Shown piece by piece: positions 18,648 through 61,047 of a stretch of DNA of 64,000 nucleotides. The notes under the pieces were generated by a model. It made no database searches. It was not told where the DNA came from and saw nothing but the letters and a program-made list of their open reading frames with translations. Positions within the stretch are counted from its first letter, which is position 1; each line of letters opens with the position of its first letter. The stretch is from Macrostomum lignano (taxonomy: Eukaryota). The stretch lies in assembly GCA_002269645.1 (NCBI GenBank), contig NIVC01003171.1, forward strand, positions 1 to 64,000, given 5' to 3'. The translations under genes were made by a program, and so were the position numbers.

Positions 18648-19518
18648 TGAGGTAGGCCTTATCTTAGCGATTGCTTGTTTCTTAGAAAATAGTACGTTTG
18701 AAATTAGACTATTTTTGTTTTAATGCGTATAGTATTAGTAGTATTGTAAATATTATGAATATTATGAAATGTTTTTTGTTTAAAACGAACTAAGAGAAGA
18801 GTATAAATACACGAGCTGAAACTGAAGGAGAGCAACTCGCCTCGTTGCATGGCTTCAAAGCTTAAAACTGTTCTAGTATCCTAAAATTGAAGCTTGATTA
18901 ATACTTATTGACTTAGTTATTTAGCAGCATTAGGATCCCCAAATTGGGAGAAACTTAGTCCGTTCTCAGAGAACGAGAAATCCTAGACTTAGAAGTCTAG
19001 TAACCCGCCTTTAGAAAGGCAGAAATCCTACCACAGGGTAGAGAAATCCAGGCTTAGAGTCTGAGAAACCCGCCTCAGGGCAGAATACCCAGCGAAGTGC
19101 GCTGTGACCCTCTGATCCCGGCAACGCCCGGACTGAGAGAAACCCTCCTAGAGGAGTGAATTGGGGATACATAGAGTTAGAGGATTAGTGCCAGGAGACC
19201 GCTCAGGCCAATAAAAGTACATACGCTACCAATAGAAGTACATGCACTACGAGTAAAGGTCAAGTAATAACCAGCAATATTAACAAAAAGGAATAACCCC
19301 TGCAACAGCTTGGTGGCAGCTAGTAAGGCTAGCAAAAGAATAAGTAGGAGCCCTGGGACAGCTTTTGGTGTCAGCGGTTGAAATTGTATAGAGAGATGGA
19401 GCCCTACGACAGCTTTTGGCGGCATAACGGTGGAATTCTTATATAGAGCCAAAAGGCCTGTAACAACTTGGTAACAGCAGTGGGATATTATTAAGAAGGA
19501 AGCAAAACCCCTAGCACA
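18648..19518 (+). repeat. 5' LTR (871 bp)
   Basis: Matches 23730 onward at offset 5082 with five substitutions seen before the terminal unit. AATAAA at ~19210. Confidence 0.93.
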
Positions 19519-19677: not shown

Positions 19678-20268
19678 ATGGCCAACGCAAATGATGCGAT
19701 TGCGATGCTAGCTGAAGAGCTAAGAAACAGGTTAGAACTAGGATCACTAAAGCAGGTAGAAGTAGAAAAGTACACGCCTGACAAGAACATCAGGCAGTGG
19801 CTCAATGCATTCGAGCAGCAATGCAGGATGCAAGGATTTAACGGAGAAGAGCGGAAGGAAGCCCTCTTCGCCAATCTGGATATCCCAGAAGGACTGAAGC
19901 GGAGGATGAGCCATAGGAAAGATCAGCAGCATTATCAGGAGATTAGGAGGCAGATCATTGAGGAGTTTGAGCCAAAACAGCAGAACCAGAAAGGAGGAAC
20001 TGAAGCCCTAGTGGAGTGCTTGGTCACCTTGATAACTATCTTCACTAGTATCAACGTGAACTCAAACCCGGAACGGCAGCAGCAGTTTCAGCAGCCAATG
20101 CCAAAGCCGCGTCCCCAGTTCAGGCACCGATTTAGTGGCGCCAGACCTGAGCCAAAACCCGGCCATTGCTTCTTCTGTGGGCAGCCAGGATCGATAAGAC
20201 CACAGGCAGGCCACAAGTGTAGGATAGACTTCAGAAAAGCCAGACAGCGAGCTCAGGAGAAAGGATGA
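19678..20268 (+). CDS. Gag-like protein with degenerate zinc knuckle
   Basis: First ORF after the PBS. Has a capsid-like IRQWLNAFEQQC segment and C-terminal CFFCGQPG...GHKC. Confidence 0.75.
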   Translation: MANANDAIAMLAEELRNRLELGSLKQVEVEKYTPDKNIRQWLNAFEQQCRMQGFNGEERKEALFANLDIPEGLKRRMSHRKDQQHYQEIRRQIIEEFEPKQQNQKGGTEALVECLVTLITIFTSINVNSNPERQQQFQQPMPKPRPQFRHRFSGARPEPKPGHCFFCGQPGSIRPQAGHKCRIDFRKARQRAQEKG

Positions 20269-21998: not shown

Positions 21999-22389
21999 AG
22001 ATGACGTAATCAGCGAACCAAAACCCCATTAGAATCAGTGTAAAATTGTTTCCATTTGTAAATAGACTCTACAAAAAAAGCTCAATAAAATAAAAACTAT
22101 AAAAGCTACAAAAAATACAAAAACATCATAATAATCTGTAAATAGTTATCTATAAAATGGTATATTGCTCATCATTGTATCTATTATATTAAGAAAGTTA
22201 TATGCATGTGAAAAATGACTCAAAGTTCTCAGCGGAGCCAAAGTGTCAAGAGTGAAGCCCAGACCCCTCCCCGAGAGCGAACACGAAGATGCGGTCCAGT
22301 TTTCCGAATATATAAACAAAACCCCTGAGGCTCCTCAGACCCGTCAATCACACCTTGCTAAGCCAAGAGTCAAACCGCTAGAAATTCTA

Positions 22390-23242
<853 letters not shown>

Positions 23243-23729: not shown

Positions 23730-24654
23730 TGAGGTAGGCCTTATCTTAGCGATTGCTTGTTTCTTAGAAAATAGTACATTTGAAATTAGACTATTTTTGT
23801 TTTAATGCGTATAATATTAGTAGTATTGTAAATATTATGAATATTATGAAATGTTTTTTGTTTAAAACGAACTAAGAGAAGAGTATAAATACACAAGCTG
23901 AAACTGAAGGAGAGCAACTCGCCTCGTTGCATGGCTTCAAAGCTTAAAACTGTTCTAGTATCCTAAAATTGAAGCTTGATTAATACTTATTGACTTAGTT
24001 ATTTAGCAGCATTAGGATCCCCAAATTGGGAGAAACTTAGTCCGTTCTCAGAGAACGAGAAATCCTAGACTTAGAAGTCTAGTAACCCGCCTTTAGAAAG
24101 GCAGAAATCCTACCACAGGGTAGAGAAATCCAGGCTTAGAGTCTGAGAAACCCGCCTCAGGGCAGAATACCCAGCGAAGTGCGCTGTGACCCTCTGATCC
24201 CGGCAACGCCCGGACTGAGAGAAACCCTCCTAGAGGAGTGAATTGGGGATACATAGAGTTAGAGGATTAGTGCCAGGAGACCGCTCAGGCCAATAAAAGT
24301 ACATACGCTACCAATAGAAGTACATGCACTACGAGTAAAGGTCAAGTAATAACCAGCAATATTAACAAAAAGGAATAACCCCTGCAACAGCTTGGTGGCA
24401 GCTAGTAAGGCTAGCAAAAGAATAAGTAGGAGCCCTGGGACAGCTTTTGGTGTCAGCGGTTGAAATTGTATAGAGAGATGGAGCCCTACGACAGCTTTTG
24501 GTGGCATAATGGTGGAATTCTTATATAGAGCCAAAAGGCCTGTAACAACTTGGTAACAGCAGTGGGATATTATTAAGAAGGAAGCAAAACCTCTAGTACA
24601 ACTTAGTGACAGCGGTGAAATCATTTGTAGGGACAGAAGTTAACCCCTAGCACA
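23730..24654 (+). repeat. 3' LTR (925 bp, one extra 54-bp unit)
   Basis: Ends CCCCTAGCACA and is followed by TSD CTTA. Confidence 0.9.
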
Positions 24655-27000
24655 CTTAGAACAATTACAAATAGATATTAAGCCCTATGCTAAGCCCTAT
24701 GACCATATTCATATCAGCTTATTTAGTCAAATCTTAGTGGCAATGGACTAGTCTATAAAGCCTAACTATATTGAACCCAAAATATACTGACTAATGAAGC
24801 ACACTTAGGCTTATTTATTATAAGCTAGTTAAATATTATTTAAGTAGCTTAAGCTAGTATTATACACTTAGACTATTAATTTATTATAAATTTGCAAAAG
24901 AATTGTTTAATAACTTTATGCTATATTAACTTTTTTTAAAAATACTAAAATTTTTATAACTTTAATATATTATTTTTTGTACTCATACAAACAATAATAG
25001 TATGGCATAGGCTTTTCCAAGTCAATAATAAGTGTATGTGTGTTATATAGTACATGCTATATACCAAAATTTAGGCCTTTGTGCACCATAAGACTTTTTT
25101 ATACTCAGTGTGCATTAGCTAGTATAAATATATACCAGAAATTTTTAGCACAAATGACATGATCCTGAGTATGACTAATAGATAAATATAGAAAAAATCT
25201 AAATGTTGTAGATATCTAAGTATTAGGCCTATGCTTAGAATTATATTCGACTTTATAATTAAGCCTTAGGCCTCATCCATTAATATTACGAAACATGTTA
25301 TTATTACCAACATGAATATTATTAATATACAATATATATTAATAAGCCTAGTGGTCTATATATTAAACAATATTATAATAGAGCCCAACCAAGATCTTGA
25401 TCTTGATCTTCTTGAACTTTTAAGAATTGGCCTTTTTGGGTCATTTTGAAAAATTCTCAAAATTTCAAGAATGATCTGGAAATTTCTACTAGAAGATACT
25501 ACTAGCATTTGGCATCCTACTAGTCTTAGGCTAACACTTATGAGGCCCTGAGCTACTAAGAACCAGAGGCTACTATTGCTAGAGCAATATACTATGGCTA
25601 CTAAATAATGAGTAAAATACAATATAAGATAAGAAAAGATATATAATACTTATTAACTTATACTATAAGCTAAATTTTATGACTTTTTCATAAGTATTAT
25701 TCTTACTAAGCTATATAAATTCATAATTGCAGCCTGATCTTTAATTCTTGATTGATTTATTCTTGATCTCAATTTTTAATAAAAATTCTTGCTCATGCTT
25801 GATCTTGCTTAAAAACAAAAATCTAATCTTGGTTGGACTCTAATAGTAATAAGTAAATAGGCCTATTTATGACTATGATCACTACTAGGCCTGAGGGCCT
25901 AGCCTATGGCTCAACATAAGGCTTAAGCTATAAGCTAATCAGGTCAGCTATGAATATAATCTAGTAGCTAGTACACCATAGTAGGATCTAAAAATAAAAA
26001 ATAAGAGCAGGCCTTGGCCAAATAAATAATGTAATGATTTATAGGCCTATCATATTTTATGCCTAGAATTCTTAGGGGCTAGGTCAAACTAATGTCAATA
26101 ACTAGGATAAGTATAGGACCTATTTTTATTATAGTATTAAAGGTATGCCTATGGCTACATGCTATGATGATAATTTTTTTCTGGAATTTTTAAAAAAGAA
26201 CATTTCTGCACATTCATATACTGATAGTAGTCCAATTCTATAGGCCTACCATACCATATCATACAAGCGTACTATCACAACCTAAGATTTGTTACTTCTC
26301 TCTGCTCTGCTAGCTGATTTAAATAGGCATAAAGCCTCTCTGCACATACAAGTGTTTTAAATTCCTAATTTTATCTTACTGATTATGAATTGTGTCGAAA
26401 TAATGATTGAAAAAACTATGTAACATAGGCCTGTATCAAGGCGTCAAGCTTTAAGTTTAGTCTTTGGTTTGGGTTTGGCTTTAGTAGTCAGAACATTGGC
26501 TATCCTTCAGAACATTCGTTAAATTACTGTCTCATTTTTAACTGATTCTTAGCGTTTATTAGGACGTAGAATTAGTAATAGTATAGATAAAGTTTTATGA
26601 CGCAGAATTAAAAACCTAATTGAAATTGGTCCAAACCTCTATCTAACCACTATGTGGCATCATGCTGCTAACGACAATAATATCATAGCCAGAAATACAT
26701 GTTTAACTAGTGACGAAATTCTAAATTAAAAAAGTGATGCATATAGCTCGTAACTTCCAAATTTCACTAAAAATAAACTAGGTTGCTGACAACTCATTTT
26801 TGTTAATAATTTCAGCTTCTAATTGTGTTAATTCAAAATGGGTGTTTAGGTTGAATTATTATGTATCTAAATTATTAAATCTTATTTGTAATTGTACGTT
26901 AAAAGAAACAAAAAAGAAGTCGCCTGTCGTCTGCACAAGCTACTCGTGTTTTTATTTTTCTTTGATCCTTTTATTTGAAAATTCGATTTCAAGGGCTACC

Positions 27001-29806
27001 ATGCCCGGGCATCTTCTTCTTTCACTTCTTTTGGCAAGTGTTCTTGCTACTAGCGAAGTTTTTTCCCATGACCTTCTCTACAAGCCAATTCGACGACCTC
27101 TTTTTGACGACGAATTGCCTGACACGATTCCGATCTTTAAAAAGATCCCTGCCATCAAAAGATCTCAACCATTGCACCTACCAACACTGATGTCATCGAC
27201 TTCACACAGTAATAGATGTTCTAACGAAGAGAGCAAGTGTTCTCTAAGCACCGGGCAAGAAGGCTGTTGTCCATACAAAAATGGAACCTGCTGTGTTGAT
27301 AAGTTAACTTGCTGCCCATTCGGACACCAATGCAATATTAAAGATGGAACTTGCATAGTTAAGCAAGACAAAGAAGTCAACGCTGTAGTGTGCCCCGACG
27401 GTCAGAGCCAGTGCCCAGACGGATCGACGTGCTGCAAGCTTCAGTCAGGTCAGTATGGCTGCTGTCCATTGGAGAAGGCCACATGCTGCAGGGACGGAGT
27501 CCACTGCTGCCCCAACGGATACAAGTGCGATGTGTCTGCTGGTACCTGCTCCAAAGGAGGCATTGTCCACGCTCTCACCAAGACTAAGACCAAGACCGAC
27601 GCCGTAGTGTGCCCCGACGGTCAGAGCCAGTGCCCAGACGGATCGACGTGCTGCAAGCTTCAGTCAGGTCAGTATGGCTGCTGTCCATTGGAGAAGGCCA
27701 CATGCTGCAGGGACGGAGTCCACTGCTGCCCCAACGGATACAAGTGCGATGTGTCTGCTGGTACCTGCTCCAAAGGAGGCATTGTCCACGCTCTCACCAA
27801 GACTAAGACCAAGACCGACGCCGTAGTGTGCCCCGACGGTCAGAGCCAGTGCCCAGACGGATCGACGTGCTGCAAGCTTCAGTCAGGTCAGTATGGCTGC
27901 TGTCCATTGGAGAAGGCCACATGCTGCAGGGACGGAGTCCACTGCTGCCCCAACGGATACAAGTGCGATGTGTCTGCTGGTACCTGCTCCAAAGGAGGCA
28001 TTGTCCACGCTCTCACCAAGACCAAGACCAAGACCGACGCCGTAGTGTGCCCCGACGGTCAGAGCCAGTGCCCAGACGGATCGACGTGCTGCAAGCTTCA
28101 GTCAGGTCAGTATGGCTGCTGTCCATTGGAGAAGGCCACATGCTGCAGGGACGGAGTCCACTGCTGCCCCAACGGATACAAGTGCGATGTGTCTGCTGGT
28201 ACCTGCTCCAAAGGAGGCATTGTCCACGCTCTCACCAAGACCAAGACCAAGACCGACGCCGTAGTGTGCCCCGACGGTCAGAGCCAGTGCCCAGACGGAT
28301 CGACGTGCTGCAAGCTTCAGTCAGGTCAGTATGGCTGCTGTCCATTGGAGAAGGCCACATGCTGCAGGGACGGAGTCCACTGCTGCCCCAACGGATACAA
28401 GTGCGATGTGTCTGCTGGTACCTGCTCCAAAGGAGGCATTGTCCACGCTCTCACCAAGACCAAGACCAAGACCGACGCCGTAGTGTGCCCCGACGGTCAG
28501 AGCCAGTGCCCAGACGGATCGACGTGCTGCAAGCTTCAGTCAGGTCAGTATGGCTGCTGTCCATTGGAGAAGGCCACATGCTGCAGGGACGGAGTCCACT
28601 GCTGCCCCAACGGATACAAGTGCGATGTGTCTGCTGGTACCTGCTCCAAAGGAGGCATTGTCCACGCTCTCACCAAGACCAAGACCAAGACCGACGCCGT
28701 AGTGTGCCCCGACGGTCAGAGCCAGTGCCCAGACGGATCGACGTGCTGCAAGCTTCAGTCAGGTCAGTATGGCTGCTGTCCATTGGAGAAGGCCACATGC
28801 TGCAGGGACGGAGTCCACTGCTGCCCCAACGGATACAAGTGCGATGTGTCTGCTGGTACCTGCTCCAAAGGAGGCATTGTCCACGCTCTCACCAAGACCA
28901 AGACCAAGACCGACGCCGTAGTGTGCCCCGACGGTCAGAGCCAGTGCCCAGACGGATCGACGTGCTGCAAGCTTCAGTCAGGTCAGTATGGCTGCTGTCC
29001 ATTGGAGAAGGCCACATGCTGCAGGGACGGAGTCCACTGCTGCCCCAACGGATACAAGTGCGATGTGTCTGCTGGTACCTGCTCCAAAGGAGGCATTGTC
29101 CACGCTCTCACCAAGACCAAGACCAAGACCGACGCCGTAGTGTGCCCGACGGTCAGAGCCAGTGCCCAGACGGATCGACGTGCTGCAAGCTTCAGTCAGG
29201 TCAGTATGGCTGCTGTCCATTGGAGAAGGCCACATGCTGCAGGGACGGAGTCCACTGCTGCCCCAACGGATACAAGTGCGATGTGTCTGCTGGTACCTGC
29301 TCCAAGTCGGGTTCCATTGCTAGCCGTGTTAAGTTGTCCAGCTGTTGCACGTTCTTCTCTGGCTCAGTGCTGTGCTGCAAGAACGGCCTTGTGTGCGACC
29401 CAAAGACGTACCAGTGCATGGCTCCTGTGTCGGAGGTTGACCAAGTGGCCACTACTGAGCCTGTTCACTCAGCTGATTATCCATCACAGTCTGTTGGATC
29501 AGCTCACTTGTCTATGTTCGGTGCACAGAGGCGCTTGGTGGCTTGCGCTGCGGGCCTTAACTGCGGCAGCAAGTCTACCTGCTGCATTACTGACTCCGGC
29601 AGTCCCAAGTGTTGCAGCCATTCTGACGTAAGTTCCTTGGTAGCTTATATAGATCTTAATGTTTCAAAACTCTCTGATATTGTATTATAATTGTTTCTCA
29701 ACCTTTAGGGCGTTTGTTGTTCCGGCGGCTCCCACTGTTGCCCCGCGGATTCGCCTGCGCCGCCAACGGCAAGTGCGCCATCGGCGCCGGCTTGTCGCAG
29801 CCGTGA
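27001..29806 (+). CDS. GRN: Progranulin: signal peptide, 1 unique plus 9 tandem near-identical granulin modules, then C-terminal modules; exons 27001-29627, 29709-29806
   Basis: Signal-like [16 protein letters not shown]. Repeated [53 protein letters not shown] with the 12-Cys granulin pattern. 1-bp deletions near 29145 and 29745. Confidence 0.95.
27385..29305 (+). repeat. 219-bp coding tandem repeat x9 (73 aa)
   Basis: Unit starts at 27385, 27604, 27823, 28042, 28261, 28480, 28699, 28918 and 29137. Confidence 0.97.
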
Positions 29807-38192: not shown

Positions 38193-39032
38193 GACCTGCA
38201 AATCCAACTGGATGGCTTTGAGTTAGCGATTTGATCTTCGGGTTAAATCATATATCTCAGCAGCTACTGATATAAAATATAAATACTTATTTAATTCCTT
38301 CAATTATCTGAATCCGTAGTCTATGGAAAAAGTCGTCATTTTTGAGTAGAACCGGCAGCACGAAAATTGCCTGCGCGAAACAGCCTGCACGACAACTGCC
38401 TGCGGCAACAACTTTGTTTGTGCGTGTGTGCTCCCTGTTGCTTTTGTTCAATTTAATAACTAGGTGAGCCAGTGTACTGTAGTATAGTAGCAAATAGTTT
38501 GTCGATTTAGAATTGTACAGTTAAATAAAAAATATATAATAACATATACTTTTGAATTCAGTACACTAAAACCTGCTTTTCATTTCTCTGTTTAGTAATT
38601 TATATTTTCTTCTAATTACTAATAATAACTATGATGTTGCGCTCTGAGTTGCTGAACAAGCTCAGCTAGCAGTCATGGTTGTCTCCACAGTCAGCTGTCG
38701 CCGCAGGCAGTTGTCGCGCAGGCAATTGTCATAGAACCAATGGAAACTGATGCCAAGAGCATTAAACAATTAATTTTCGTAAGTACGAGTAAAAAGTATT
38801 TTAACTACTTTTTACCATAGACTAAGGACTTCTCACTCACAATTCAACCCTCAAGTTACGCAACTAAGCCGCCGCGAGGGAAAGTTTATTGAACCTGTGG
38901 CGGCCAGACCTGCACGCAGCGTGATATCTGGTGAATTGGTACTCAAACCCCCTGGCCCGCATAGCTGGGGTGGGGGGGGGGTGGGTGCACCCAGCCCTCC
39001 GGCTCTTTAAGCCAGTGGGGTATTGTGTGATT

Positions 39033-39392
39033 TTTTTTTTTTAGAGGCAGGGGGGTTGTGTGCACCCTGGCGCAATTTAAGCGTCATTGGCACACAACCG
39101 GCGAGAGGCATTACTGCCCATTCCGCCGACTCCCCTGAGCAGGCATACAAGCGCGCGGATACGTTACGCAGGCACACACTCACACAGGAGTGTACAGCGG
39201 CCCTAACTTTATCAATTGTTAGGCATGTACACTTCACTGCGCCTTGGGGGGTTGGCTCTCAAGGCCGTTAATTGCACAAGCGAGCCAAGCCAAGATTCCA
39301 ATCCAGCCCCAAATTAATGTGGCTGCACTTGGAATCGAGCCTGGGTCGCGGCACACCAGAGCAGCTGCGCTACCGCTGGGCTACGGCCCCCC
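39033..39392 (-). mobile_element. tRNA-derived SINE, family A, copy 2
   Basis: Near-identical to 31306-31658; TSD GGTATTGTGTGATT. Confidence 0.92.
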
Positions 39393-40577
39393 GGTATTGT
39401 GTGATTGACTCGCCTCGTTGTGCGCACCTCCCCATGCTCTAAACTATAAAAATAGCAGATTGAAAAATAAAAACTTTTTTTACCTCTCTTTTGCATTGCC
39501 ATTTTGCGAGACACTAAAAATCATTAATAAACGCCAGTCGCACAAAATTAGGTCCAAATGGGCTGTAAAAAGCTATGCAAAAGGTAATACCAGTATATAA
39601 TACAGCTTTTATAAGGTTTGGCCATAGAATAATGCTTTTAAACGAGCCTCGTACTTTTTTACACCATATTACTGTAGAGTTTACAGTCGTGAGTGATTAA
39701 CTAGGGCTGTGACTGTAAGGTATTGCCATAGAGCCTTTTCCATAATGACAATTGGCAGCAAGTACGATATTATAATAGGTAGTTGACCCTGCAACTCACT
39801 CAGGTTACTCGCCACTGTATGTAATTGTCACTGCAGTCAGCTATCGTGGAACCGAAGGAGACCAGCAAACGAAGGGCATCAGTCAATTTCATCAGTAGCG
39901 CTAGTTACGCCCGTGAATCTAATATCATCGTCAATCGATAGTCGTAACCCGATGTGGCATCGGGGACGTGTTAAAGCAGACATAATATGCATTTTAGCGT
40001 GAGCTATTAAGTTGTGTACAAGAACGAGAAACAGATACTAGGAAACCTTTGGAGGCTGACTGACACTCACGACGAAAGAGGCATGATTTTATGCGATATG
40101 CAGACCTGGAAATGCACACGAGTACATACGCATGTACATTCTCTCTAACGCTTTTGGATCTTACTCGCACTTGCTTCAGCGCATCCTGCTTTCATGTTTG
40201 TTACCTGCGAACAAAGTTAAACCACAGTTAATGTGTTCATGCCCATTGCACATCCCACAGAGCTCATCCTGTCTCACCTATTCGCAAGTAATAAAACTCA
40301 ATTAAGACAACGGAAATTTTCGACATTGAAGGTTAAAACTTTGCTCATCTAAACGGCATAAAGCGTAAGTATATTTTAAAGACGCATGCAAGTACAAGTT
40401 GGACTCTGCAAGCTGATTAGGCGATACAGTTACAAAAAGTGAGGCGAATACCAATTCCAGCTTCTCCAGGTTCCACGTGACCGGCCGGGAGCTGAAATGT
40501 ATTTTTAATATATCTGATTCAGTACGAAGGCTGCTTCGAAAGTACTGCAACGGGAATTTCTAGACTAAAGGGTAAAA

Positions 40578-41369
40578 AATCAGAGAGGGCAAGTTAGTCG
40601 TCACTTGGGGTTGCCATAGCGACGGGTAAACGATAAACATCATTTGCGCATAAAGTCAGCATTCTATAGTAAAGTAATTCTCATTAGACTCACCTCAGCA
40701 CCAATGCCAATTTGCTCACACCAGACCGAGCTCAGAGCAGTTCTTCCTGAAAAAATAATTTGCTTCAATCAGCTCCAACAGCACAAGAGAGACAAATGCA
40801 CACAATGAGATGAAGCTCTAATCAGAGAGGGCAAGTTAATCGTCATCTGGGTGTTGCCATAGCGACGGGTAAACGATAGACATCATGGATAATGGATAAA
40901 ATCGAGCAGCTGAGCTCGCACTGGGACTCACAGAAAAATCCGTGGGTTATGAGCGACCACCTCTGCCCACGGCTGGCTCTGAAAGGGTGAATGGGAAGCA
41001 GATAATCAAGAATACAGTTTTGTACATCACACAGCGTTTCACTTTTGATTTTTTAGCAAGAAATCAGAGAGGGCAAGTTAGTCGTCACTTGGGGTTGCCA
41101 TAGCGACGGGTAAACGATAGACATCATTGATAGTGGATAAAATCGAGCAGCTGAGCTCGCACTGGGACTCACAGACAAATCCGTGGGTTATGAGCGACCG
41201 CCTCTGCCCACGGCTGGCTCTGAAAGGGTGAATGGGAAGCAGATAATCAAGAATACAGTTTTGTACATCACACAGCATTTCACTTTTGATTTTTTAGCAA
41301 GAAATCAGAGAGGGCAAGTTAATCGTCATCTGGGGTTGCCATAGCGACGGGTAAACGATAGGCATCATT
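40578..41369 (-). ncRNA. C/D-box snoRNA copies 1-4 (40578-40644, 40820-40886, 41062-41128, 41303-41369)
   Basis: Minus strand reads ATGATG(T/C)..GTGACGA/ATGACGA..ACTTGCCCTCT-CTGATT: box C, C'-like, guide, box D and terminal AAT/ATT pairing. The guide is complementary to 18S GGAGGGCAAGU. Confidence 0.85.
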
Positions 41370-41536
41370 GTCAGGTCGTCGCACAGAACGCAAAGCTCAA
41401 ACATACCTGCAAGAGTTTCGGTGCGGAAATGCGGGCTGTGGCAGTCCTGAAGGTGGCGATTCTGAACACCTGCGAGCACAGCCAACTGGGGCTGAAATCA
41501 CCGGTAAGTGGGTTTAATCATGTCCAGTCACGGTCT

Positions 41537-41855
41537 TGGATCCCTGCATTCCTAAACCTTGCATCCCTGCATTCCTTAACCTTGCATCCCTGCATTCCTT
41601 AACCTTGCATCCCTGCATTCCTTAACCTTGGATCCCTGCATTCCTAAACCTTGCATCCCTGCATTCCTTAACCTTGCATCCCTGCATTCCTTAACCTTGG
41701 ATCCCTGCATTCCCGACCTTGGATCCCTGCATTCCCGACCTTGGATCCCTGCATTCTTTAACTTTGCATCCCTGCATTCCCGACCTCGGGTCCCTGCATT
41801 CCCGACCTTGGACTCCCTGGATTCCTTAACCTTGGATCCCTGCATTCCCGACCTT
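41537..41855. repeat. 22-23-bp minisatellite (TTGCATCCCTGCATTCCTTAACC)n
   Basis: Directly visible. Confidence 0.93.
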
Positions 41856-41930
41856 TAATATCTGAATTACCGACCCTAATTTTCGGGCTAAATAATAAGT
41901 GATAATAGACACTAGAAATTCATCGCTCTA

Positions 41931-43246
41931 CGAGGGGTGATCAAAAAGTTCCGCAACCTTTTGTTATAGCTTTTAGTTATAGAATCGGAAAAAGCCAAAA
42001 ACTTACACATGCGGCTATATCTGTTGCTATATTTATATGCATTTTTGGCTTTCAAATGTGCTCCAGTCAAATTTCACAGCCATATATTTCCCATGTGTTT
42101 TCATTAGCTGATGGAACCATCAAAATCAAAAGACAATGTTCGCTTCTATATCTTTATGTGCATGCAACTTGGTTGCAGTGACTGAGATTCATACCGATCC
42201 GGTGAATGTTTTAGCTGACTCTGCTCCATCATTTGACACGGTTGCCCGCTGGCTGCGCCATTTCTTGGAAGGCTGGGACAGCTTCAACTATGAACCGAGG
42301 TCTGGCCGACCCCGGACATCCGTGACCGAAGATGTCGTGGCCCATGCCGATGCAATAATTCGTGAGGATTGGAGCATTACGCTAAGATTCCTTGCCTATG
42401 AGCTTGGTGTCAGCTATGGAAGTGCTCATAACATCATGCATGAGCAACTGCGCCGCACAAAGACCTGCGCTCGGTGGGTACCCCATCTTCTCACTCCGGA
42501 GCAGCAAGCAGAGAGGGTGCGCATCTGTCTCTTGTGGGTGCAAATGTTTGAGCCCCACGGCCCACGACGACTGTCGGATGTCATCACAGGAGACAAATGT
42601 TGGATCTCCTTCTTTCACCATGAAGGATAAGCAGTCCAACATGGTCTGGCTGGCAGATGAGCCCGAGGCCCAAGGTGCTGAAGACCGGATTCCGCAGTTG
42701 GAAGCGGATATTCACCATTTTTTCAACTCTCAGGGTGTTGTATCGGTAAACATCCTTCCAGCGGGTGCCACAGTGACTGCCAGGTACTACACAGACACCG
42801 TTCTGCCAGGCGTACTGCAGGAGCGGCAGGAATGTGCGCGAACCAGGCATGGACCTCGACTCCTGCTGCACCATGACAATGCGGCACCGCACAGAGCGGC
42901 CTCAACCATGGCGTACCTGGAGCAGCAGGGGGTCCGGCTGCTGCCCCATCCACCCTACTCTCCAGACCTAGCATCATGCGACTTTTGGCTGTTCCCGAGG
43001 ATCGAATTCGTCATTTCTGGGAGGCCGTTTTCACGCATACAAGACCTTGCCCAAGCGGTACATTCAGCTCTACAGGGTATACCAACTTCGGAGTACCATG
43101 ACTGCTTTCAGACACAGTGCATACGCATTGCGATGGTGCATAGATAGTGGTGGAAAGTACTTTGAGGGAATGACACTGATTAGACGCCGTGGTTGCTGTA
43201 ACACTGAGTTGTGAGGTCACTTGCAAAACTTTTTGACCACCCCTCG
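41931..43246 (+). mobile_element. Mariner (DD34D-type) transposon with frameshifted transposase (~42136-43147)
   Basis: TIRs CGAGGGGTGATCAAAAAGTT / AACTTTTTGACCACCCCTCG, flanked by TA. Motifs WVPHLLT, VITGD, LLHHDNAAPH, HPPYSPDLASCDFWLF. Confidence 0.95.
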
Positions 43247-43306
43247 TAAATGTACAATTTAATGGGAAACGAAAAAACTGCTAAACAATTTTATTGAAAA
43301 TGATTG

Positions 43307-44625
43307 AATCAGAGAGGGCAAGTTAGTCGTCACTTGGGGTTGCCATAGCGACGGGTAAACGATAAACATCATTTGCGCATAAAAGTCAGCATTCTATAGT
43401 AAAGTAATTCTGATTAGACTCACCTGAGCAGCAATGCCAATTTGCTCACACCAGACCAAGCTCAGAGCAGACTTTCTTCCTGAAATAAAAGAATTTGCTT
43501 CAATCAGCTCCAACAGCACAAGAGAGACAAATGCACACAATGAGATGAAGCTCTAATCAGAGAGGGCAAGTTAGTCGTCATCTGGGGTTGCCATAGCGAC
43601 GGGTAAACGATAGACATCATTGATAGTGGATAAAATCGAGCAGCTGAGCTCGCACTGGGACTCACAGACAAATCCGTGGGTTATGAGCGACCACCTCTGC
43701 CCTCGGCTGGCTCTGAAAGGGTGAATGGGAAGCAGATAATCAATAATACAGTTTTGTACATCACACAGCGTTTCACTTTTGATTTTTTAGCAAGAAATCA
43801 GAGAGGGCAAGTTAGTCGTCACTTGGGGTTGCCATAGCGACGGGTAAACGATAGGCATCATGGATAGTGGATAAAATCGAGCAGCTGAGCTCGCACTGGG
43901 ACTCACAGAAAAATCCATGGATTATTAGAGACCACCTCTGCCCTCGGTTGGCTGAAAGAATGCATTGGAAGCTGAAATCTAATTACAGATGCACTTTAAA
44001 CAAACGTCTAATGAAGACTTGACCAGTTATTAACAGACAACAAAATCAGAGAGGGCAAGTTGGTCGTCACTTGGGGTTGCCATAGCGACGGGTAAACGGT
44101 AGGCATCATAAAAATAGCAGAGTTCAGGAAAATGTGTCATAAAAGGCATCGCTGAAAATTACAGCTATAAAGTGTTCAACTCCTGCGGCACTGCTACAGA
44201 TCTACAAGACCGAGCCTGGAAGGTTAATTTAAGCGGACAGACTAATAAGACAAGTAGTATATAAGAGTATTTTATTTGTATTTTAATAAAATATATTGAG
44301 TCAGAGAGGGCAAGTTGGTCGTCACTTGGGGTTGCCATAGCGACGGGTAAACGATAGGCATCATGTTCTTTAAATGCACAAAAACACTCGCAGGTGCAAC
44401 ATAGCAATCGAACTTGACTCACCGATATTCGCTATCCGTATGAGCAGGCAAGCTGCGAACTCCATGGGTGGCCCTGTCAATGCAATCAGTTCGATACGTC
44501 AGTAATGAATCAAATTCCAGGTCTTTGTGCCACTAGTTCTGCACTTTTGACAGACAGAATCAGAGAGGGCAAGTAAGTCGTCACACGGGTAACCATAGCG
44601 AATAGTAAAAACAATAAACATCATT
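43307..44625 (-). ncRNA. C/D-box snoRNA copies 5-10 (43307-43373, 43555-43621, 43796-43861, 44044-44109, 44299-44364, 44558-44625)
   Basis: Same C/D architecture and D-adjacent guide as copies 1-4. Copy 10 is diverged in its 5' half but keeps the D guide. Confidence 0.85.
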
Positions 44626-44804
44626 TATTTATAGACTAAACACCAAATAGAAATGAAAACTTATACATGCACACCAACTCACCCACACAGATCCGCAGTT
44701 TGAGAGTCAGAGAGCGAGAGATGGCGACTGGCATTTTACTCGGCTGTCAGCTGAAACACGCATTTTGAGTCAGCTGATGGTGAATCGGAGATCTCGTTTA
44801 GTCA

Positions 44805-45420
44805 TTTAACACTGGAGATGGGATCTCACTTCATTAGTTAACACTGGAGATGGGATCTCACTTCATTAGTTAACACTGGGGACGGGATCTCACTTCATTA
44901 GTTAACGCTGGGGATGGGATCTCATTTCATTAGTTAATACTGGGAATGGGATCTCACTTCATTAGTTAACACTGGGGATGGGATCTCACTTCATTAGTTA
45001 ATACTGGGGAGGGGATGGGATCTCACTTCATTAGTTAACACTGGGGATGGGATCTCAGTTCATTAGTTAACACTGGGAATGGGATCTCACTTCATTAGTT
45101 AATACTGGGGAGGGGATGGGATCTCAGTTCATTAGTTAACACTGGGGATGGGATCTCACTTCATTAGTTAACACTGGGGATGGGATCTCACTTCATTAGT
45201 TAACACTGGGGATGGGATCTCAGTTCATTAGTTAACACTGGGGATGGGATCTCACTTCATTAGTTAACACTGGAGATGGGATCTCACTTCATTAGTTAAC
45301 ACTGGGGATGGGATCTCACTTCATTAGTTAACACTGGAGATGGGATCTCACTTCATTAGTTAACACTGGGGATGGGATCTCAGTTCATTAGTTAACACTG
45401 GGGATGGGATCTCAGTTCAG
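44805..45420. repeat. 32-bp minisatellite (TTCATTAGTTAACACTGGGGATGGGATCTCAC)n
   Basis: Directly visible. Confidence 0.95.
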
Positions 45421-45890
45421 CACCCGACCCTGGGATGGGAATGGCACTTCAGCAGAATTATGATAAATGAGATATTAAAGTCAACAAAACAACAGGTGAA
45501 ATCAGCAAAATAATACTTGTATTTACTTGTGGCGGCATATTGGTGCGACTTGATGCACAATATTCATGCATCACCGATGCCTTTATTGTGTCTCAAAAAC
45601 AAGATAAGTGACTTGTTGAGACAAGTAGCAAAATTTTGAACTCAATCATATAATTAGGAGACAAGCCGGAGCTAGGCTATTTATGCAGCACATAGCAAGT
45701 ACTGCAGATCTGTACACGGATGTGCAGGCAGCCGAGCGGACCGAAGGCTCTGCCACCCGGAAAGCAAAACGTACAAATACAAAACATATCGTGCAAAGTA
45801 CGAGTATATTTTAAATCGAGCAGAAAGTTTGGCAAAATAGCAAATGAACAAATTGCCTTGAGGACTGGGAGGCAGACAGACAGGCAGGCG

Positions 45891-52205
<6,315 letters not shown>

Positions 52206-57219: not shown

Positions 57220-58804
57220 ATGAGAACTAACCAAAATTTAGTACTTGTGGCATTGCGAATGTGTACTAATCACTGTGGCGTATCTACTTCGGAAACAAAA
57301 CTGGACCCATTCAAAGTGTACTAATATCACTGTGGCGCATTTACTTCGGTAACAAAACTGGACCCATTCAAAGATGCAACTGCTTGGGAGAAAAAATTTG
57401 GTAGCTTCAGAGTCACTGCCAACAAGGCCCAACAATTTGACCGCTTCAAAAGTACATCTCATTCGAAACAAAGGCCTGACCGCTGCAGAGTCGCTGCCAA
57501 CGCTGATCGATGTCGAAATGATCAAGAACTGTCCTCCGTTCAACGAGCTCCACAACGTCGACTTCACGAACCCCAGCCTGCGGCACCGGCTGTGTCAGGA
57601 GACGCTGGCCTACCAGTTAGTCAGGGGCAAGTTTCCTCTGTGCGAGCTGAACAGGAACTTACCGCAGCAGATGTACACCATTGTCAGACAAGGGTCTCCT
57701 CTAGCCAATGTGGCCCGAGCGATGGGCGGCGGCCGAATGCCGATATTCACATTCGGCAAGTTAAGGAGGACATGATTTCCAGACTATTGATAAAAAACGG
57801 CGCATGGGAAGCTGACTCTATTCGGACGATGCTCAACCTGTTACAGAAGCTTCCGAAAAACTCTGCGACGTTCCTCGATATCGGCAGCAACATTGGCATC
57901 TACAGCCTGCAGGCCAGAGAGCTCGGGTATCCCGTGGTGGCCATCGATGCAAACATTCGCACACTGGTCAGGCTGCAGATGTCAGCGAAGCAGCTGAACT
58001 TGCTTGACGACAAGCTGAGGCTCTTCTGGGGCTTCATCAGAGCGACGACGTGGCAGTCAAGCGGATCAGTTGGGACGCTGACAGCATGAATTGCAATGTT
58101 GGAGGCGGCTCGGGCGGATCGACTGACTGGAAATGGCAGGCCACGAAGTTAATCGAGGACACGATTTCCGTGACCACTGTTAAAGCGGACGAGCTTCGAG
58201 CGCACATCGGCACCAAGAATGTGGTCATCAAGATGGATATCGAGTCTGGTGAGCACCTGTTCATGAAGACTGGTGAGAAGCTGTTCAGAGAGCGATCAAC
58301 ATCATGGCGCTGCAGATGGAGTTCTGGAGGAAAAAAATCAGTAACCGACCGCAATTGTCCGAACATTACGAGTTTGTGACTCACTTCATGACCTCGAGGA
58401 ACTTCTCTCTGCTGTCCATGAGCTTCCAAGTGCAGAACATCGCTATATTCAACGAATGGGACGGACTGTGGGTCAGAAACGAATTTCAGCAAGACACGGA
58501 GGCCAGATCTCAGATTTCTATGGCTCAGCCGAGACAATTGCAGCAAGACACGGAGGCCAGATCTCAGATTTCTATGGCTCAGCCGAGACAATTGCAGCAA
58601 GACACGGAGGCCAGATCTCAGATTTCTATGGCTCAGCCGAGACAATTGCAGCAAGACACGGAGGCCAGATGTCAGAATTCTATGGCTCAGCCGAGACAAT
58701 TGCAGCAAGACACGGAGGCCAGATGTCAGAATTCTATGGCTCAGCCGAGACAATTGCAGCAAGACACGGAGGCCAGATGTCAGAATTCTATGGCCATAGA
58801 CTAA
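57220..58804 (+). CDS. FkbM-family (Methyltransf_21) SAM-dependent methyltransferase, intronless, with several frameshifts; C-terminus runs into the 54-bp repeat
   Basis: DMISRLLIKNGAWE, FLDIGSNIGIYSL..GYPVVAIDAN, VVIKMDIESGEHLF..LFRE.NI..LQMEFW are spread over four frames (shifts near 57765, 58045, 58295). Possible N-terminal signal anchor near 57220-57320. Confidence 0.8.
58487..58796. repeat. 54-bp minisatellite, left block (~6 copies; encodes QQDTEARSQISMAQPRQL)
   Basis: Unit CAGCAAGACACGGAGGCCAGATGTCAGAATTCTATGGCTCAGCCGAGACAATTG. Confidence 0.95.
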
Positions 58805-58869: not shown

Positions 58870-60041
58870 TCCGCCTGGGTTACCAAAGACTGTGTTCAAA
58901 AAGTTGTTAGGCTTCGCTACCTCTGGCATCTTCATGTTTGATGACAAATATTATCGCCAGATTGATGGTTGTGCCATGGGAAGCCCGCTTGCTCCTACTC
59001 TGGCCAATGTTTGCATGGCGCACTGGGAAACGGAGTGGATGTCGCTTGAGTGTGCGCCAACTTTCTACAAGCGCTATGTTGATGACACTTTTGTCATTTT
59101 TGATGACCGGGCTAAGTACCAAGAGTTTTTTCGGGCTCTGAATTCAACCCACAGCAACATCCAATTCACCGTTGAGATGGGAGGTAAAAAACTTCCGTTT
59201 CTCGATGTTGAGGTTGATCTGAGCAGTGGCCAAGTCTCTACTCGGGTTTATCGCAAGCCCACGTTTACTGGTTTACTGTTGAATTTCAATGCCCTCTGTC
59301 CGAAACAGTGGAATATTGGCCTGATCCATTGTATGCTGCACAGAGCTTACTCTCTGTGTAGTTCCTGGGCTGCGTTTGATGAGGAGGTGACAAATTTGAC
59401 TAGGATTTTCAGTATGAACGGATACCCAAAAAATCTCATTAGTCGGTTGATTTTCAAGTTTGTCACTGATAAGGTTACTGGCAGACTGCAACAGAATCAT
59501 AGTAAAAAGCCGGATGACCCCGTGATGATCTTGCCGTTCTATGGTATCCGTCTATCTTGTTGAAAAAGAAGCTTGAGAGATCTTTTCGGAAATGGTACAA
59601 CACTCCGATTAGGATTGTCTTTCGCACTGCCAAGGTGGGTCAATTTGTCAGCAATCTCAAGTCCCATGTTCCTCGTGCTCTAGTTGCAGGTGTCGTCTAT
59701 AAATTTTGTTGTTCTGAAGATCAGAATATCTCTTACGTGGGAAAAACCAAAAGACACCTGCACACCAGAGTTAGGGAGCATTGGCTGAAAAAATCTGCTA
59801 TCCAGGACCACCTTCTGGAATGCAAGGGCTGCTGTGACAGAGAACAGATTGAATTGTTTAAAATTATCGACCGTGCTAACTCTGAATTCAAGCTTAGCAT
59901 TCTTGAAGCGCTGCACATCAAAGCTCAAAATCCCAGTCTCAATGTGCAATTGCTACATAGTGGTGCGGGCCACCTTCTTAGGGTGTTTTGAGTTTGACTA
60001 TTTTTTGTTGCGCGTACATTTTGTTTTTTTACATCTGTTTG

Positions 60042-60677: not shown

Positions 60678-61047
60678 CCCAGAATTATATGGCTTAGCCG
60701 AGACAATTGCAGCAAGACACGGAGGCCAGATGTCAGAATTCTATGGCTCAGCCGAGACAATTGCAGCAAGACACGGAGGCCAGATGTCAGAATTCTATGG
60801 CTCAGCCGAGACAATTGCAGCAAGACACGGAGGCCAGATGTCAGAATTCTATGGCTCAGCCGAGACAATTGCAGCAAGACACGGAGGCCAGATGTCAGAA
60901 TTCTATGGCTCAGCCGAGACAATTGCAGCAAGACACGGAGGCCAGATGTCAGAATTCTATGGCTCAGCCGAGACAATTGCAGCAAGACACGGAGGCCAGA
61001 TGTCAGAATTCTATGGCTCAGCCGAGACAATTGCAGCAAGACACGGA
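60678..61047. repeat. 54-bp minisatellite, right block (~7 copies)
   Basis: Same unit as 58487-58796. Confidence 0.95.

What the first reader, a model, noticed from the sequence alone, without database searches (positions are those of the whole stretch)
40578..44625. CRISPR-looking array is a ten-copy intronic C/D snoRNA cluster in a non-coding host gene
Seen: ten ~67-bp conserved repeats separated by ~175-190-bp spacers, of several unrelated types. On the minus strand each repeat has box C (ATGATG), box D (CTGA) and the guide ACTTGCCCTCT. Each spacer contains one tiny AG..GT exon, and the D box lies ~70-85 nt upstream of the next acceptor in the units I measured. Known: the guide pairs with 18S GGAGGGCAAGU, and the D+5 rule selects the middle G of GGG, equal to human 18S Gm601 (yeast Gm562). 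About 70-80 nt spacing is the optimum for splicing-coupled C/D snoRNP assembly in mammals, and hosts are often 5'TOP RNAs; a pyrimidine tract is present at ~44720. Inference: a whole lncRNA dedicated to amplifying one guide by exon-intron unit duplication (spacer types A-B-B at 40.6-41.3 kb recur at 43.3-43.9 kb), with snoRNAs homogenised while exons diverge.
Basis: partly seen in the sequence, partly recalled or inferred. Interest (0 to 1): 0.8.

Follow-up and report, generated by a model that had tools for sequence, protein, structure and literature searches.

The report
Ten-copy intronic C/D snoRNA array
A flatworm-like animal genome carries ten near-identical copies of a small RNA predicted to guide methylation of one ribosomal RNA base, each copy inside its own short intron of a non-coding gene; this is a clear but fairly ordinary example of a known arrangement in a poorly studied animal group.

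Summary
Ten 64-65-nt repeats lie on the minus strand between 40580 and 44624. Each has box C (AUGAUG), a C'-like box (RUGACGA), box D (CUGA) and an invariant 11-nt guide flush against box D. Conservation starts at box C and ends 1-2 nt after box D, while the spacers fall into about five unrelated classes.

Each spacer holds one 40-85-nt mini-exon with consensus splice sites. GTGAGT always sits 45-58 nt before a C box, and the acceptor lies 75-94 nt after the D box. The spliced RNA is non-coding.

By the D+5 rule the guide selects the middle G of 18S GGAGGGCAAGU. Neither yeast nor Drosophila is reported to methylate it.

There is no Rfam match, no relatives were found, and no expression data could be consulted. 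The host gene's ends are unresolved.

Verdict: an intron-encoded C/D snoRNA array in a UHG-like host, from a Macrostomum-related genome. It is a new member of a known kind.

The parts
44560..44624 (-). snoRNA copy S1. It is divergent in the 5' half; boxes C, C', D and the D guide are intact.
44301..44364 (-). snoRNA copy S2
44046..44109 (-). snoRNA copy S3
43798..43861 (-). snoRNA copy S4
43557..43620 (-). snoRNA copy S5
43309..43372 (-). snoRNA copy S6, identical to S10. It lies 1,817 nt from the next acceptor because of the insertions.
41305..41368 (-). snoRNA copy S7
41064..41127 (-). snoRNA copy S8
40822..40886 (-). snoRNA copy S9 (one extra A)
40580..40643 (-). snoRNA copy S10
44683..44750 (-). 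Mini-exon E1 with donor GTGAGT at 44682. Its 5' boundary is uncertain: there is an acceptor-like tttcag at 44755-44751, and it contains the pyrimidine-rich tract.
44423..44473 (-). Mini-exon E2 (51 nt), donor GTGAGT
44163..44215 (-). Mini-exon E3 (53 nt), weak donor GTAATT
43907..43951 (-). Mini-exon E4 (45 nt; an alternative acceptor would start it at 43971)
43666..43712 (-). Mini-exon E5 (47 nt)
43424..43479 (-). Mini-exon E6 (56 nt)
41407..41491 (-). Mini-exon E7 (85 nt), donor GTATGT
41173..41219 (-). Mini-exon E8 (47 nt)
40932..40978 (-). Mini-exon E9 (47 nt)
40694..40746 (-). Mini-exon E10 (53 nt)
40452..40491 (-). Exon E11. The acceptor is clear. The 3' boundary is uncertain: the donor GTATTC is weak, so this may be the start of a longer terminal exon.
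41929..43248 (+). Mariner-family DNA transposon inserted in intron 6, antisense to the host. It has 28-nt TIRs and TA flanks, and the transposase is split by a frameshift.
41535..41848 (.). 23-bp minisatellite (13.8 copies) in intron 6

Best explanation
This is a tandem array of ten intron-encoded box C/D snoRNA genes in a multi-exon, non-protein-coding host gene on the minus strand of an animal genome, probably a flatworm related to Macrostomum.

Proposed mechanism (inferred unless marked as shown):
- RNA polymerase II transcribes the host.
- Each short intron (185-211 nt) carries one snoRNA. The snoRNA sits 38-58 nt after the 5' splice site and 75-94 nt before the 3' splice site, about 52-60 nt before the likely branch point. 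This geometry is shown.
- The C/D core proteins (Snu13, Nop58, Nop56, fibrillarin) assemble during splicing.
- After debranching, exonucleases trim the intron back to the protected snoRNP of about 65-70 nt.
- The invariant 11-nt element ACUUGCCCUCU next to box D pairs with 18S rRNA (G/A)GAGGGCAAGU at the 5' side of helix 18, just upstream of the 530 loop (pairing shown).
- Fibrillarin then 2'-O-methylates the nucleotide paired to the fifth guide position, the middle G of GGG. This equals human 18S G601.

The ten copies raise the dose of one guide. They arose by duplication of exon-intron units, including a recent three-unit block (shown). Their variants were shuffled by gene conversion (inferred). 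The spliced exons have no coding capacity (shown) and are probably a by-product.
For: - Motifs and boundaries: boxes C, C'-like and D and the guide are intact in 10 of 10 copies. Conservation starts at the first base of box C and stops 1-2 nt after box D.
- Spacers: the embedded element is 89-100 % identical across spacer classes that are otherwise no more alike than shuffled sequence.
- S1: its 5' half has drifted, but the boxes and the whole D guide are untouched.
- Target: the guide is complementary to GGAGGGCAAGT, found in 36 of 44 environmental eukaryotic 18S genes at the expected place and in the Rfam SSU consensus. The helix is flush with box D.
- Site numbering: the D+5 nucleotide maps to human G601, the annotated SNORD103 target. 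The numbering is anchored by Yang 2015 and by the Drosophila Nm table.
- Splice signals: there are eight GTGAGT donors 45-58 nt before a C box and none on the other strand, against about 1-1.5 expected. TTCAG acceptors lie 74-94 nt after the D box. Candidate branch points lie 52-60 nt after the D box in seven introns, matching the published optimum of about 50 nt (PMC8162545).
- Coding capacity: the spliced 576-nt RNA has stops in all frames and a longest ORF of 38 aa.
- No shared sequence lies upstream of the copies that could act as individual promoters.
- All four combinations of two variant sites occur among the copies, as expected from gene conversion.
Against: - No RNA evidence of any kind could be consulted.
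- No Rfam family matches, even at E <= 10.
- No related locus was found: 0 hits in metagenome contigs.
- A terminal stem outside boxes C/D is nearly absent (0-2 bp).
- No canonical D' box exists.
- On pairing strength alone the guide-target match is only modestly unusual: 16 of 400 shuffles reach it somewhere in the conserved rRNA core. The argument therefore leans on position, the D+5 coincidence with a known human site, and invariance.
- The site is not reported as methylated in yeast or Drosophila.
- The species' own 18S was not available.
- The host gene's 5' and 3' ends are unresolved.
Confidence: 0.78

Rival explanations
1. The architecture is the same, but the host is not an independent lncRNA. 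The mini-exons would be 3' extensions (spliced 3'-UTR exons or read-through) of the DZF-domain protein gene that ends 1.1 kb upstream on the same strand, or the transcript would start further upstream or be SL trans-spliced at the acceptor in front of 'exon 1'.
For: A DZF_C-domain ORF lies on the minus strand and ends at 45891. The sequence gtgtttcag|C forms a good acceptor at about 44751, just 5' of the putative first exon. No promoter could be identified.
Against: An AATAAA lies about 300 nt after the DZF stop codon (45587-45582, minus strand). A 600-bp minisatellite separates the two units.
Confidence: 0.12
2. The array is a decaying or silent set of snoRNA pseudogenes, or a tandem duplication carrying a snoRNA-derived sequence along, and produces no functional snoRNP.
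For: There is no expression evidence, no terminal stem, no Rfam match and no D' box. The locus tolerates a transposon and a minisatellite in one intron.
Against: All ten copies keep every box and the full guide, while unrelated flanks have diverged to the level of shuffled sequence. Splice sites are kept at fixed distances in unrelated spacer classes.
Confidence: 0.06
3. The snoRNAs are real, but their main role is not methylation of the 18S G601-equivalent. They could be orphan or regulatory guides like SNORD115/116, or could act through the 5' half on 28S.
For: The 5' half pairs with two conserved 28S stretches: GCGGGUAAACGG (12 bp) and (C/U)CAUAGCGACG (11 bp). The known large tandem C/D arrays all encode orphan snoRNAs (PMC11028025).
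Against: The 28S matches are at chance level (35 of 400 shuffles). They lack any CUGA-like D' box, and the first is lost in S1. The invariant CGCUAUGG is better explained as one strand of an internal hairpin with the C' region, which S1 preserves with changed bases. The only guide in canonical position is the 18S one.
Confidence: 0.04

Closest known systems
Human/vertebrate SNORD103 (U103), guide for 18S Gm601
   Same: Box C/D snoRNA, intron-encoded. The guide upstream of box D selects the same 18S nucleotide, the middle G of GGAGGGCAAGU.
   Different: No detectable sequence or covariance-model similarity (no Rfam hit at E <= 10), so homology cannot be claimed. From my own knowledge, SNORD103 copies sit in a protein-coding host, not a ten-copy array in a lncRNA.
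Non-coding snoRNA host genes of the UHG/GAS5 type, including the seven Drosophila Uhg genes
   Same: Multi-exon RNA with short, ORF-less exons and one C/D snoRNA per intron. The same snoRNA can occur as lettered copies (a, b, c) (PMC11014333; PMC11028025).
   Different: Those hosts carry several different guides. Here all ten introns carry the same guide. A TOP-type start could not be tested.
Eutherian tandem C/D arrays in repeated introns of lncRNAs (SNORD115/116 at the PWS locus, SNORD113/114 at 14q32, rat Bsr)
   Same: The exon-intron unit carrying one C/D snoRNA is repeated in tandem in a non-coding RNA gene, and copies evolve by unequal recombination and gene conversion (PMC11028025; PMC8162545).
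   Different: Those arrays are eutherian-specific, imprinted, orphan (no rRNA target), and number tens to hundreds of copies. This array has ten copies and a canonical rRNA guide, sits in a non-mammalian genome, and has several unrelated spacer types.
Yeast snR40 / 18S Gm562
   Same: A C/D guide acting on helix 18 of 18S.
   Different: A different nucleotide, 10 nt downstream: G of CUGG*U, human G611 (PMC4344503).

Membership tests
Box C/D snoRNA | Box C (RUGAUGA) near the 5' end | tested here: met
   AUGAUG(C/U) in 10 of 10 copies, matching 6 of 7 consensus positions
Box C/D snoRNA | Box D (CUGA) near the 3' end | tested here: met
   CUGA in 10 of 10 copies, 64-65 nt from the start of box C
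Box C/D snoRNA | Guide of at least 10 nt directly upstream of box D, complementary to rRNA, with the fifth position opposite the modified nucleotide | tested here: met
   11 bp (10 Watson-Crick pairs plus a terminal G-U, or A-U in some taxa) to 18S GGAGGGCAAGU. The D+5 nucleotide equals human Gm601. Pairing alone reaches p of about 0.04.
Box C/D snoRNA | Terminal stem bringing boxes C and D together (stem I of the k-turn) | tested here: inconclusive
   Only 0-2 complementary base pairs flank the boxes, and the folds show no terminal helix. From my own knowledge, short or absent stems occur in some invertebrate snoRNAs.
Box C/D snoRNA | Internal C' and D' boxes | tested here: inconclusive
   C'-like RUGACGA is present in 10 of 10 copies. 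No CUGA-like D' box lies between C and C'. An internal hairpin pairs CGUCGCU-A-UGG with CCA-AGUGACG.
Box C/D snoRNA | Stable RNA of about 60-100 nt bound by fibrillarin/Nop56/Nop58/Snu13 | not testable with these tools
   No expression or CLIP data available
Rfam SNORD103 (or any curated snoRNA family) | Covariance-model match | tested here: not met
   No snoRNA family matched any of the ten copies at gathering score or at E <= 10
UHG-type non-coding snoRNA host gene | One snoRNA per intron, at a fixed distance from the 3' splice site or branch point | tested here: met
   Ten introns with ten snoRNAs. The D box lies 75-94 nt before the acceptor in 9 of 10 introns and 52-60 nt before candidate branch points.
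UHG-type non-coding snoRNA host gene | Spliced exons lack a conserved ORF | tested here: met
   Stops in all three frames; longest ORF 38 aa
UHG-type non-coding snoRNA host gene | 5'TOP transcription start | tested here: inconclusive
   A pyrimidine-rich tract is present at about 44724-44702, but the start site is unknown and an acceptor lies upstream of it
Eutherian-type tandem C/D arrays (SNORD115/116-like) | Tandemly repeated exon-intron unit in a lncRNA | tested here: met
   Spacer classes B'-B-A and B-B-A, with a three-unit block duplicated at 94-98 % identity
Eutherian-type tandem C/D arrays (SNORD115/116-like) | Orphan guides (no rRNA/snRNA target); imprinted locus | tested here: not met
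   A canonical rRNA complementarity is present. Imprinting is not testable.
CRISPR array | Short (23-47 bp) identical repeats, unique spacers of similar length, prokaryotic context with cas genes | tested here: not met
   The repeats are 64 nt and the spacers 177-195 nt. The spacers themselves are repeated in classes. The window is an animal genome carrying granulin, SET, DZF and mariner sequences and spliceosomal introns.

The most novel reading that the evidence does not exclude
A non-mammalian lncRNA has independently evolved into a tandem 'snoRNA factory' of the kind so far described only at eutherian imprinted loci. Here it is devoted to a canonical rRNA guide whose target, the equivalent of human 18S Gm601 next to the 530 loop, is not methylated in yeast or fly. 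Copy number at this locus would then set the level of a lineage-variable methylation near the decoding centre, giving a handle on ribosome heterogeneity in a regenerating flatworm. The divergent copy S1 would be a first step towards a new guide.
Probability: 0.25. Interest if true: 0.55.

Novelty: new member of a known kind. Interest (0 to 1): 0.4.

Why it matters
Intron-encoded C/D snoRNAs, non-coding host genes and local snoRNA duplication are textbook. Arrays in which one guide fills every intron of a lncRNA have so far been described as a eutherian, imprinted, orphan-snoRNA speciality. A recent review explicitly expects more of them in understudied genomes (PMC11028025).

This locus would be a compact invertebrate example with a clear predicted rRNA target. 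It would show that the same architecture arises for ordinary ribosome-modification guides. It also predicts a specific, testable 18S methylation that is present in human but absent from the yeast and fly lists.

It also gives a clean natural experiment on the spacing rule. One copy, S6, has been pushed 1.8 kb from its acceptor by a transposon.

Tried and rejected
- Rfam at gathering score and at E <= 10: none of the ten copies matched any family.
- Search of metagenome contigs for C'-box + guide + D-box: 0 hits. Cross-species covariation was therefore not possible.
- Exact-protein look-up to locate the source contig: nothing on record.
- A second guide in the 5' half. Two attractive matches to conserved 28S were found (GCGGGUAAACGG and CAUAGCGACG). 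I rejected them as evidence because 35 of 400 shuffles do as well, no D' box follows either, and one is lost in S1. An internal hairpin explains the invariant CGCUAUGG better.
- The yeast Gm562 equivalence: rejected from PMC4344503.
- Retroposed snoRNA copies: no poly(A) tails or target-site duplications flank the copies.
- Individually transcribed genes: no shared upstream motif.
- Other C/D snoRNAs in the window or the same host. A simple C...D plus rRNA-complementarity scan gave only hits at chance level. These include GCUGUUGGAG|CUGA in the type-A spacers and a 73-nt candidate at 45574-45502.
- A crude consensus-score splice test was only moderately discriminating: 6-9 % of shuffles pass. 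The GTGAGT count is the stronger statistic.
- CRISPR: rejected on repeat and spacer sizes, repeated spacers and the eukaryotic context.
Full report
**1. What is there**

On the minus strand between 44624 and 40580 there are ten copies of a 64-65-nt element. The consensus is AUGAUG(Y)CUAUCGUUUACCCGUCGCUAUGGCAACCCCA(AG/GA)UGACGAYUAACUUGCCCUCUCUGA.

A profile built from the ten copies finds only these ten in the 64-kb window, all on the minus strand. Copies S2-S10 are 89-100 % identical. S1, the most 5' copy, is 76-83 % identical to the others.

When the copies are lined up with their flanks, agreement jumps from noise to near-unanimity at the first base of AUGAUG. It falls back to noise 1-2 nt after CUGA.

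Eight of the nine spacers are 177-195 nt. They fall into these classes:
- {sp4, sp7, sp8}: 97 % identical
- sp3: about 77 % identical to those
- {sp5, sp9}: 94 % identical
- sp1, sp2, sp6, sp10: no more alike than shuffled sequence (50-63 % against 55 +/- 2.6)

The order B'-B-A ...

It contains two insertions:
- A 1.3-kb mariner-family element with 28-nt inverted repeats at 41929-41956 and 43221-43248 and TA flanks. Its transposase is split by a frameshift, and it lies on the plus strand.
- A 23-bp minisatellite at 41535-41848.

**2. Box C/D anatomy**

Every copy has these features:
- Box C, AUGAUG(C/U).
- An internal C'-like box, (G/A)UGACGA. Its only variable position is the purine position of the consensus.
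- Box D, CUGA.
- Directly upstream of box D, the invariant ACUUGCCCUCU.

S1 has drifted through most of its 5' half but keeps all boxes and the whole D guide. This is the pattern expected if the D guide is the selected function.

Two canonical features are weak:
- The flanks offer only 0-2 bp of terminal stem.
- No CUGA-like D' box lies between C and C'.

Folding predicts an internal hairpin instead (CGUCGCU-A-UGG / CCA-AGUGACG). It joins the invariant CGCUAUGG to the C' region. S1 keeps an equivalent hairpin with different bases (AA changed to GU, with a shifted bulge).

The plus strand has no box arrangement of this kind.

No Rfam family matches any of the copies, at gathering score or at E <= 10.

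**3. The target**

I fetched 120 environmental eukaryotic rDNA loci using the 18S 3'-end sequence.
- GGAGGGCAAGU, followed by CUGGUGCCAGCAGC, is present in 36 of the 44 loci that contain enough 18S. It lies about 1,220 nt from the 3' end. Two of the 36 have AGAGGGCAAGU, which would make the guide's last U a Watson-Crick pair.
- The same sequence is in the Rfam SSU consensus.
- The helix is 11 bp and flush with box D.
- The fifth guide nucleotide from box D is the middle C of CCC, so the selected nucleotide is the middle G of GGG.

Numbering of that nucleotide:
- Yang et al. 2015 state that yeast Gm562 is followed by U563 and equals human G611. Gm562 is therefore the G of CUGG*UGCC, ten positions downstream.
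- The middle G of GGG is then yeast G552 = human G601.
- The Drosophila Nm table gives the same offsets: Am549 = human A590 = yeast A541, and Um586 = human U627 = yeast U578. That puts the site at Dm G560.
- Established numbering of the decoding-centre G (E. coli G530 = yeast G577 = human G626, from my own knowledge) agrees.

Human G601 is the annotated target of SNORD103. The site is not among the yeast Nm sites or the Drosophila sites.

**4. How strong is the pairing argument**

A shuffle test against the conserved core of 11 complete rDNA units shows that pairing alone is only modestly unusual. 16 of 400 shuffles of the 14 nt upstream of box D reach the same score somewhere.

The weight comes from three further facts:
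- The helix abuts box D.
- The D+5 nucleotide coincides with a known Nm site.
- These 15 nt are invariant in ten copies whose surroundings are unrelated.

The 5' half also pairs with two conserved 28S stretches. However, 35 of 400 shuffles do as well, no D' box follows either match, and one match is lost in S1. I do not count these as a second guide.

**5. The host gene**

Each spacer contains one candidate mini-exon of 40-85 nt, bounded by a pyrimidine tract + CAG and by a GT donor.
- Eight of the ten donors are the full consensus GTGAGT.
- Those eight account for 8 of the 22 minus-strand GTGAGT hexamers in the whole 64-kb window.
- They fall inside 4.4 kb, each 45-58 nt upstream of a C box, and none is on the plus strand there.
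- The acceptors, mostly TTCAG, lie 75-94 nt after the D box in nine introns.
- Candidate branch motifs (CTGAT, CTGAC, TTGAT, CTTAT) lie 52-60 nt after the D box in seven introns.

This matches the published rule that intronic C/D snoRNAs sit about 50 nt upstream of the branch point (PMC8162545).

Nine introns are 185-211 nt. Intron 6 is 1,932 nt because of the insertions, which leaves S6 1,817 nt from its acceptor.

The 576-nt spliced product has stop codons in all three frames and no ORF above 38 aa.

A cruder consensus-score test was less discriminating: 6-9 % of shuffles pass, and sp1 and sp2 fail the strict version. Splicing is therefore well supported but not proven.

**6. Ends of the host**

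Upstream on the same strand a DZF_C-domain ORF ends at 45891. An AATAAA follows about 300 nt later, at 45587-45582. Then comes a 32-bp minisatellite at 44806-45419, then the putative first exon.

It is also preceded by a good acceptor, gtgtttcag|C, at about 44751. The exon could therefore be internal, trans-spliced, or the true start. The 5'TOP idea cannot be judged.

Downstream, exon 11 has a clear acceptor but a weak donor. The next minus-strand AATAAA is at 38890. The 3' end is open.

**7. Evolution of the array**

The three-unit block duplication is recent: spacers are 94-97 % identical and snoRNAs 96-100 %.

Between older units the spacers are unalignable while the snoRNAs stay at least 89 % identical.

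Two variant sites, C/U after box C and AG/GA at the C' box, occur in all four combinations among S2-S10. S7 also differs from S4 and S8 more than its 97 %-identical flanks do. This points to gene conversion among copies (inference).

No poly(A) tails or target-site duplications flank the copies, which argues against retroposition.

**8. Organism**

The window is an animal genome rich in minisatellites (63 TRF rows).

Two conserved exons, a Suv4-20/KMT5-type SET domain and an SLC17-like MFS transporter, each have Macrostomum lignano as their best relative by a wide margin, at 65 % and 59 % identity. The next-best SET hits are 51-54 %.

The source is therefore probably a flatworm related to Macrostomum but not well represented in the protein collection. 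I found no paper describing snoRNAs of this group.

**9. Comparison with what is known**

Functionally this is the counterpart of vertebrate SNORD103, because it selects the same 18S nucleotide. There is no demonstrable sequence homology.

Architecturally it combines two known arrangements:
- The UHG/Drosophila-Uhg type of non-coding host, with one snoRNA per intron.
- The tandem repetition of an exon-intron-snoRNA unit known from eutherian SNORD113-116 and rat Bsr.

Unlike those eutherian arrays it has only ten copies and carries a canonical rRNA guide.

It is not a CRISPR array: the repeats are 64 nt, the spacers of about 180 nt are themselves repeated, and the context is eukaryotic.

**10. 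Verdict**

The central interpretation is supported by sequence evidence at several independent levels, with one factual correction (the yeast site), one omission (the 1.9-kb intron) and several untestable additions (TOP start, 'dedicated' lncRNA).

It is a new member of a known kind in an understudied lineage. It is of moderate interest, mainly as a non-mammalian example of a single-guide tandem array and as a specific methylation prediction.

Noticed in passing
window 26800-29700 (+), repeat 27380-29305: Progranulin-like gene in one long ORF with nine Pfam Granulin domains. Eight to nine of them are encoded by a 219-bp tandem repeat that is 99 % identical, which indicates a very recent domain amplification.
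   Followed up: partly
window 41929-43248 (+): Dead mariner-family transposon inside intron 6 of the snoRNA host, antisense to it. It has 28-nt TIRs and TA flanks, its transposase is frameshifted, and its best relatives are 68 % identical. A 23-bp minisatellite sits next to it.
   Followed up: yes
window 44806-45419: 32-bp minisatellite (about 19 copies) lying directly between the 3' end of the DZF gene and the first recognisable host exon. It may be promoter-proximal or intronic.
   Followed up: partly
window 45891-46358 (-): Exon encoding a DZF C-terminal domain (ILF2/ILF3/ZFR-type protein) on the same strand as the snoRNA host. Its stop codon is at 45891 and an AATAAA lies at 45587-45582.
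   Followed up: partly
window 43504 and 40769 (-), type-A spacers: GUGCUGUUGGAG followed by CUGA is complementary to 18S CUCCAAUAGC, just 3' of the 530 loop. No C box precedes it, and the CUGAU is also the likely branch point of those introns. By my estimate this is at chance level. A weak Rfam sR4 hit (E = 0.53) lies immediately 3' of it.
   Followed up: partly
window 45502-45574 (-): A 73-nt stretch with GUGAUGC ... CUGA just after the DZF poly(A) signal. Its rRNA complementarity is weak (3 G-U pairs) and it has no terminal stem. It is probably chance.
   Followed up: no
window 58892-59991 (+): Adjacent ORFs with a reverse-transcriptase domain and a GIY-YIG nuclease domain. This is the combination typical of Penelope-like retroelements. 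They are flanked by 54-bp tandem repeats at 58482-58794 and 60680-61047.
   Followed up: partly
window 19208-19257 and 24290-24339: The same 21-bp repeat (CCAATAAAAGTACATACACTA, 2.4 copies) occurs twice, 5.1 kb apart. It brackets ORFs without Pfam hits at 19678-20268 and 22243-23242. These may be the terminal repeats of a retroelement.
   Followed up: no
window 39330-39400 (-): A tRNA-like stretch (GGGGCCGTAGCCCAGCGGTAGCGC ... GGCTCGATTCC) that ARAGORN does not call as a tRNA. It may be a tRNA-derived SINE.
   Followed up: partly
whole window: Very high density of micro- and minisatellites (63 TRF rows, many of 15-54-bp period and hundreds of bp long), several of them inside long spurious ORFs. 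AATAAA is twice as frequent as in shuffles.
   Followed up: no
window 15914-16330 (-) and 12504-13142 (+): A Suv4-20/KMT5-type SET-domain exon and an SLC17-like MFS transporter exon. Both have Macrostomum lignano proteins as their closest relatives (65 % and 59 %), which is the only clue to the source organism.
   Followed up: yes
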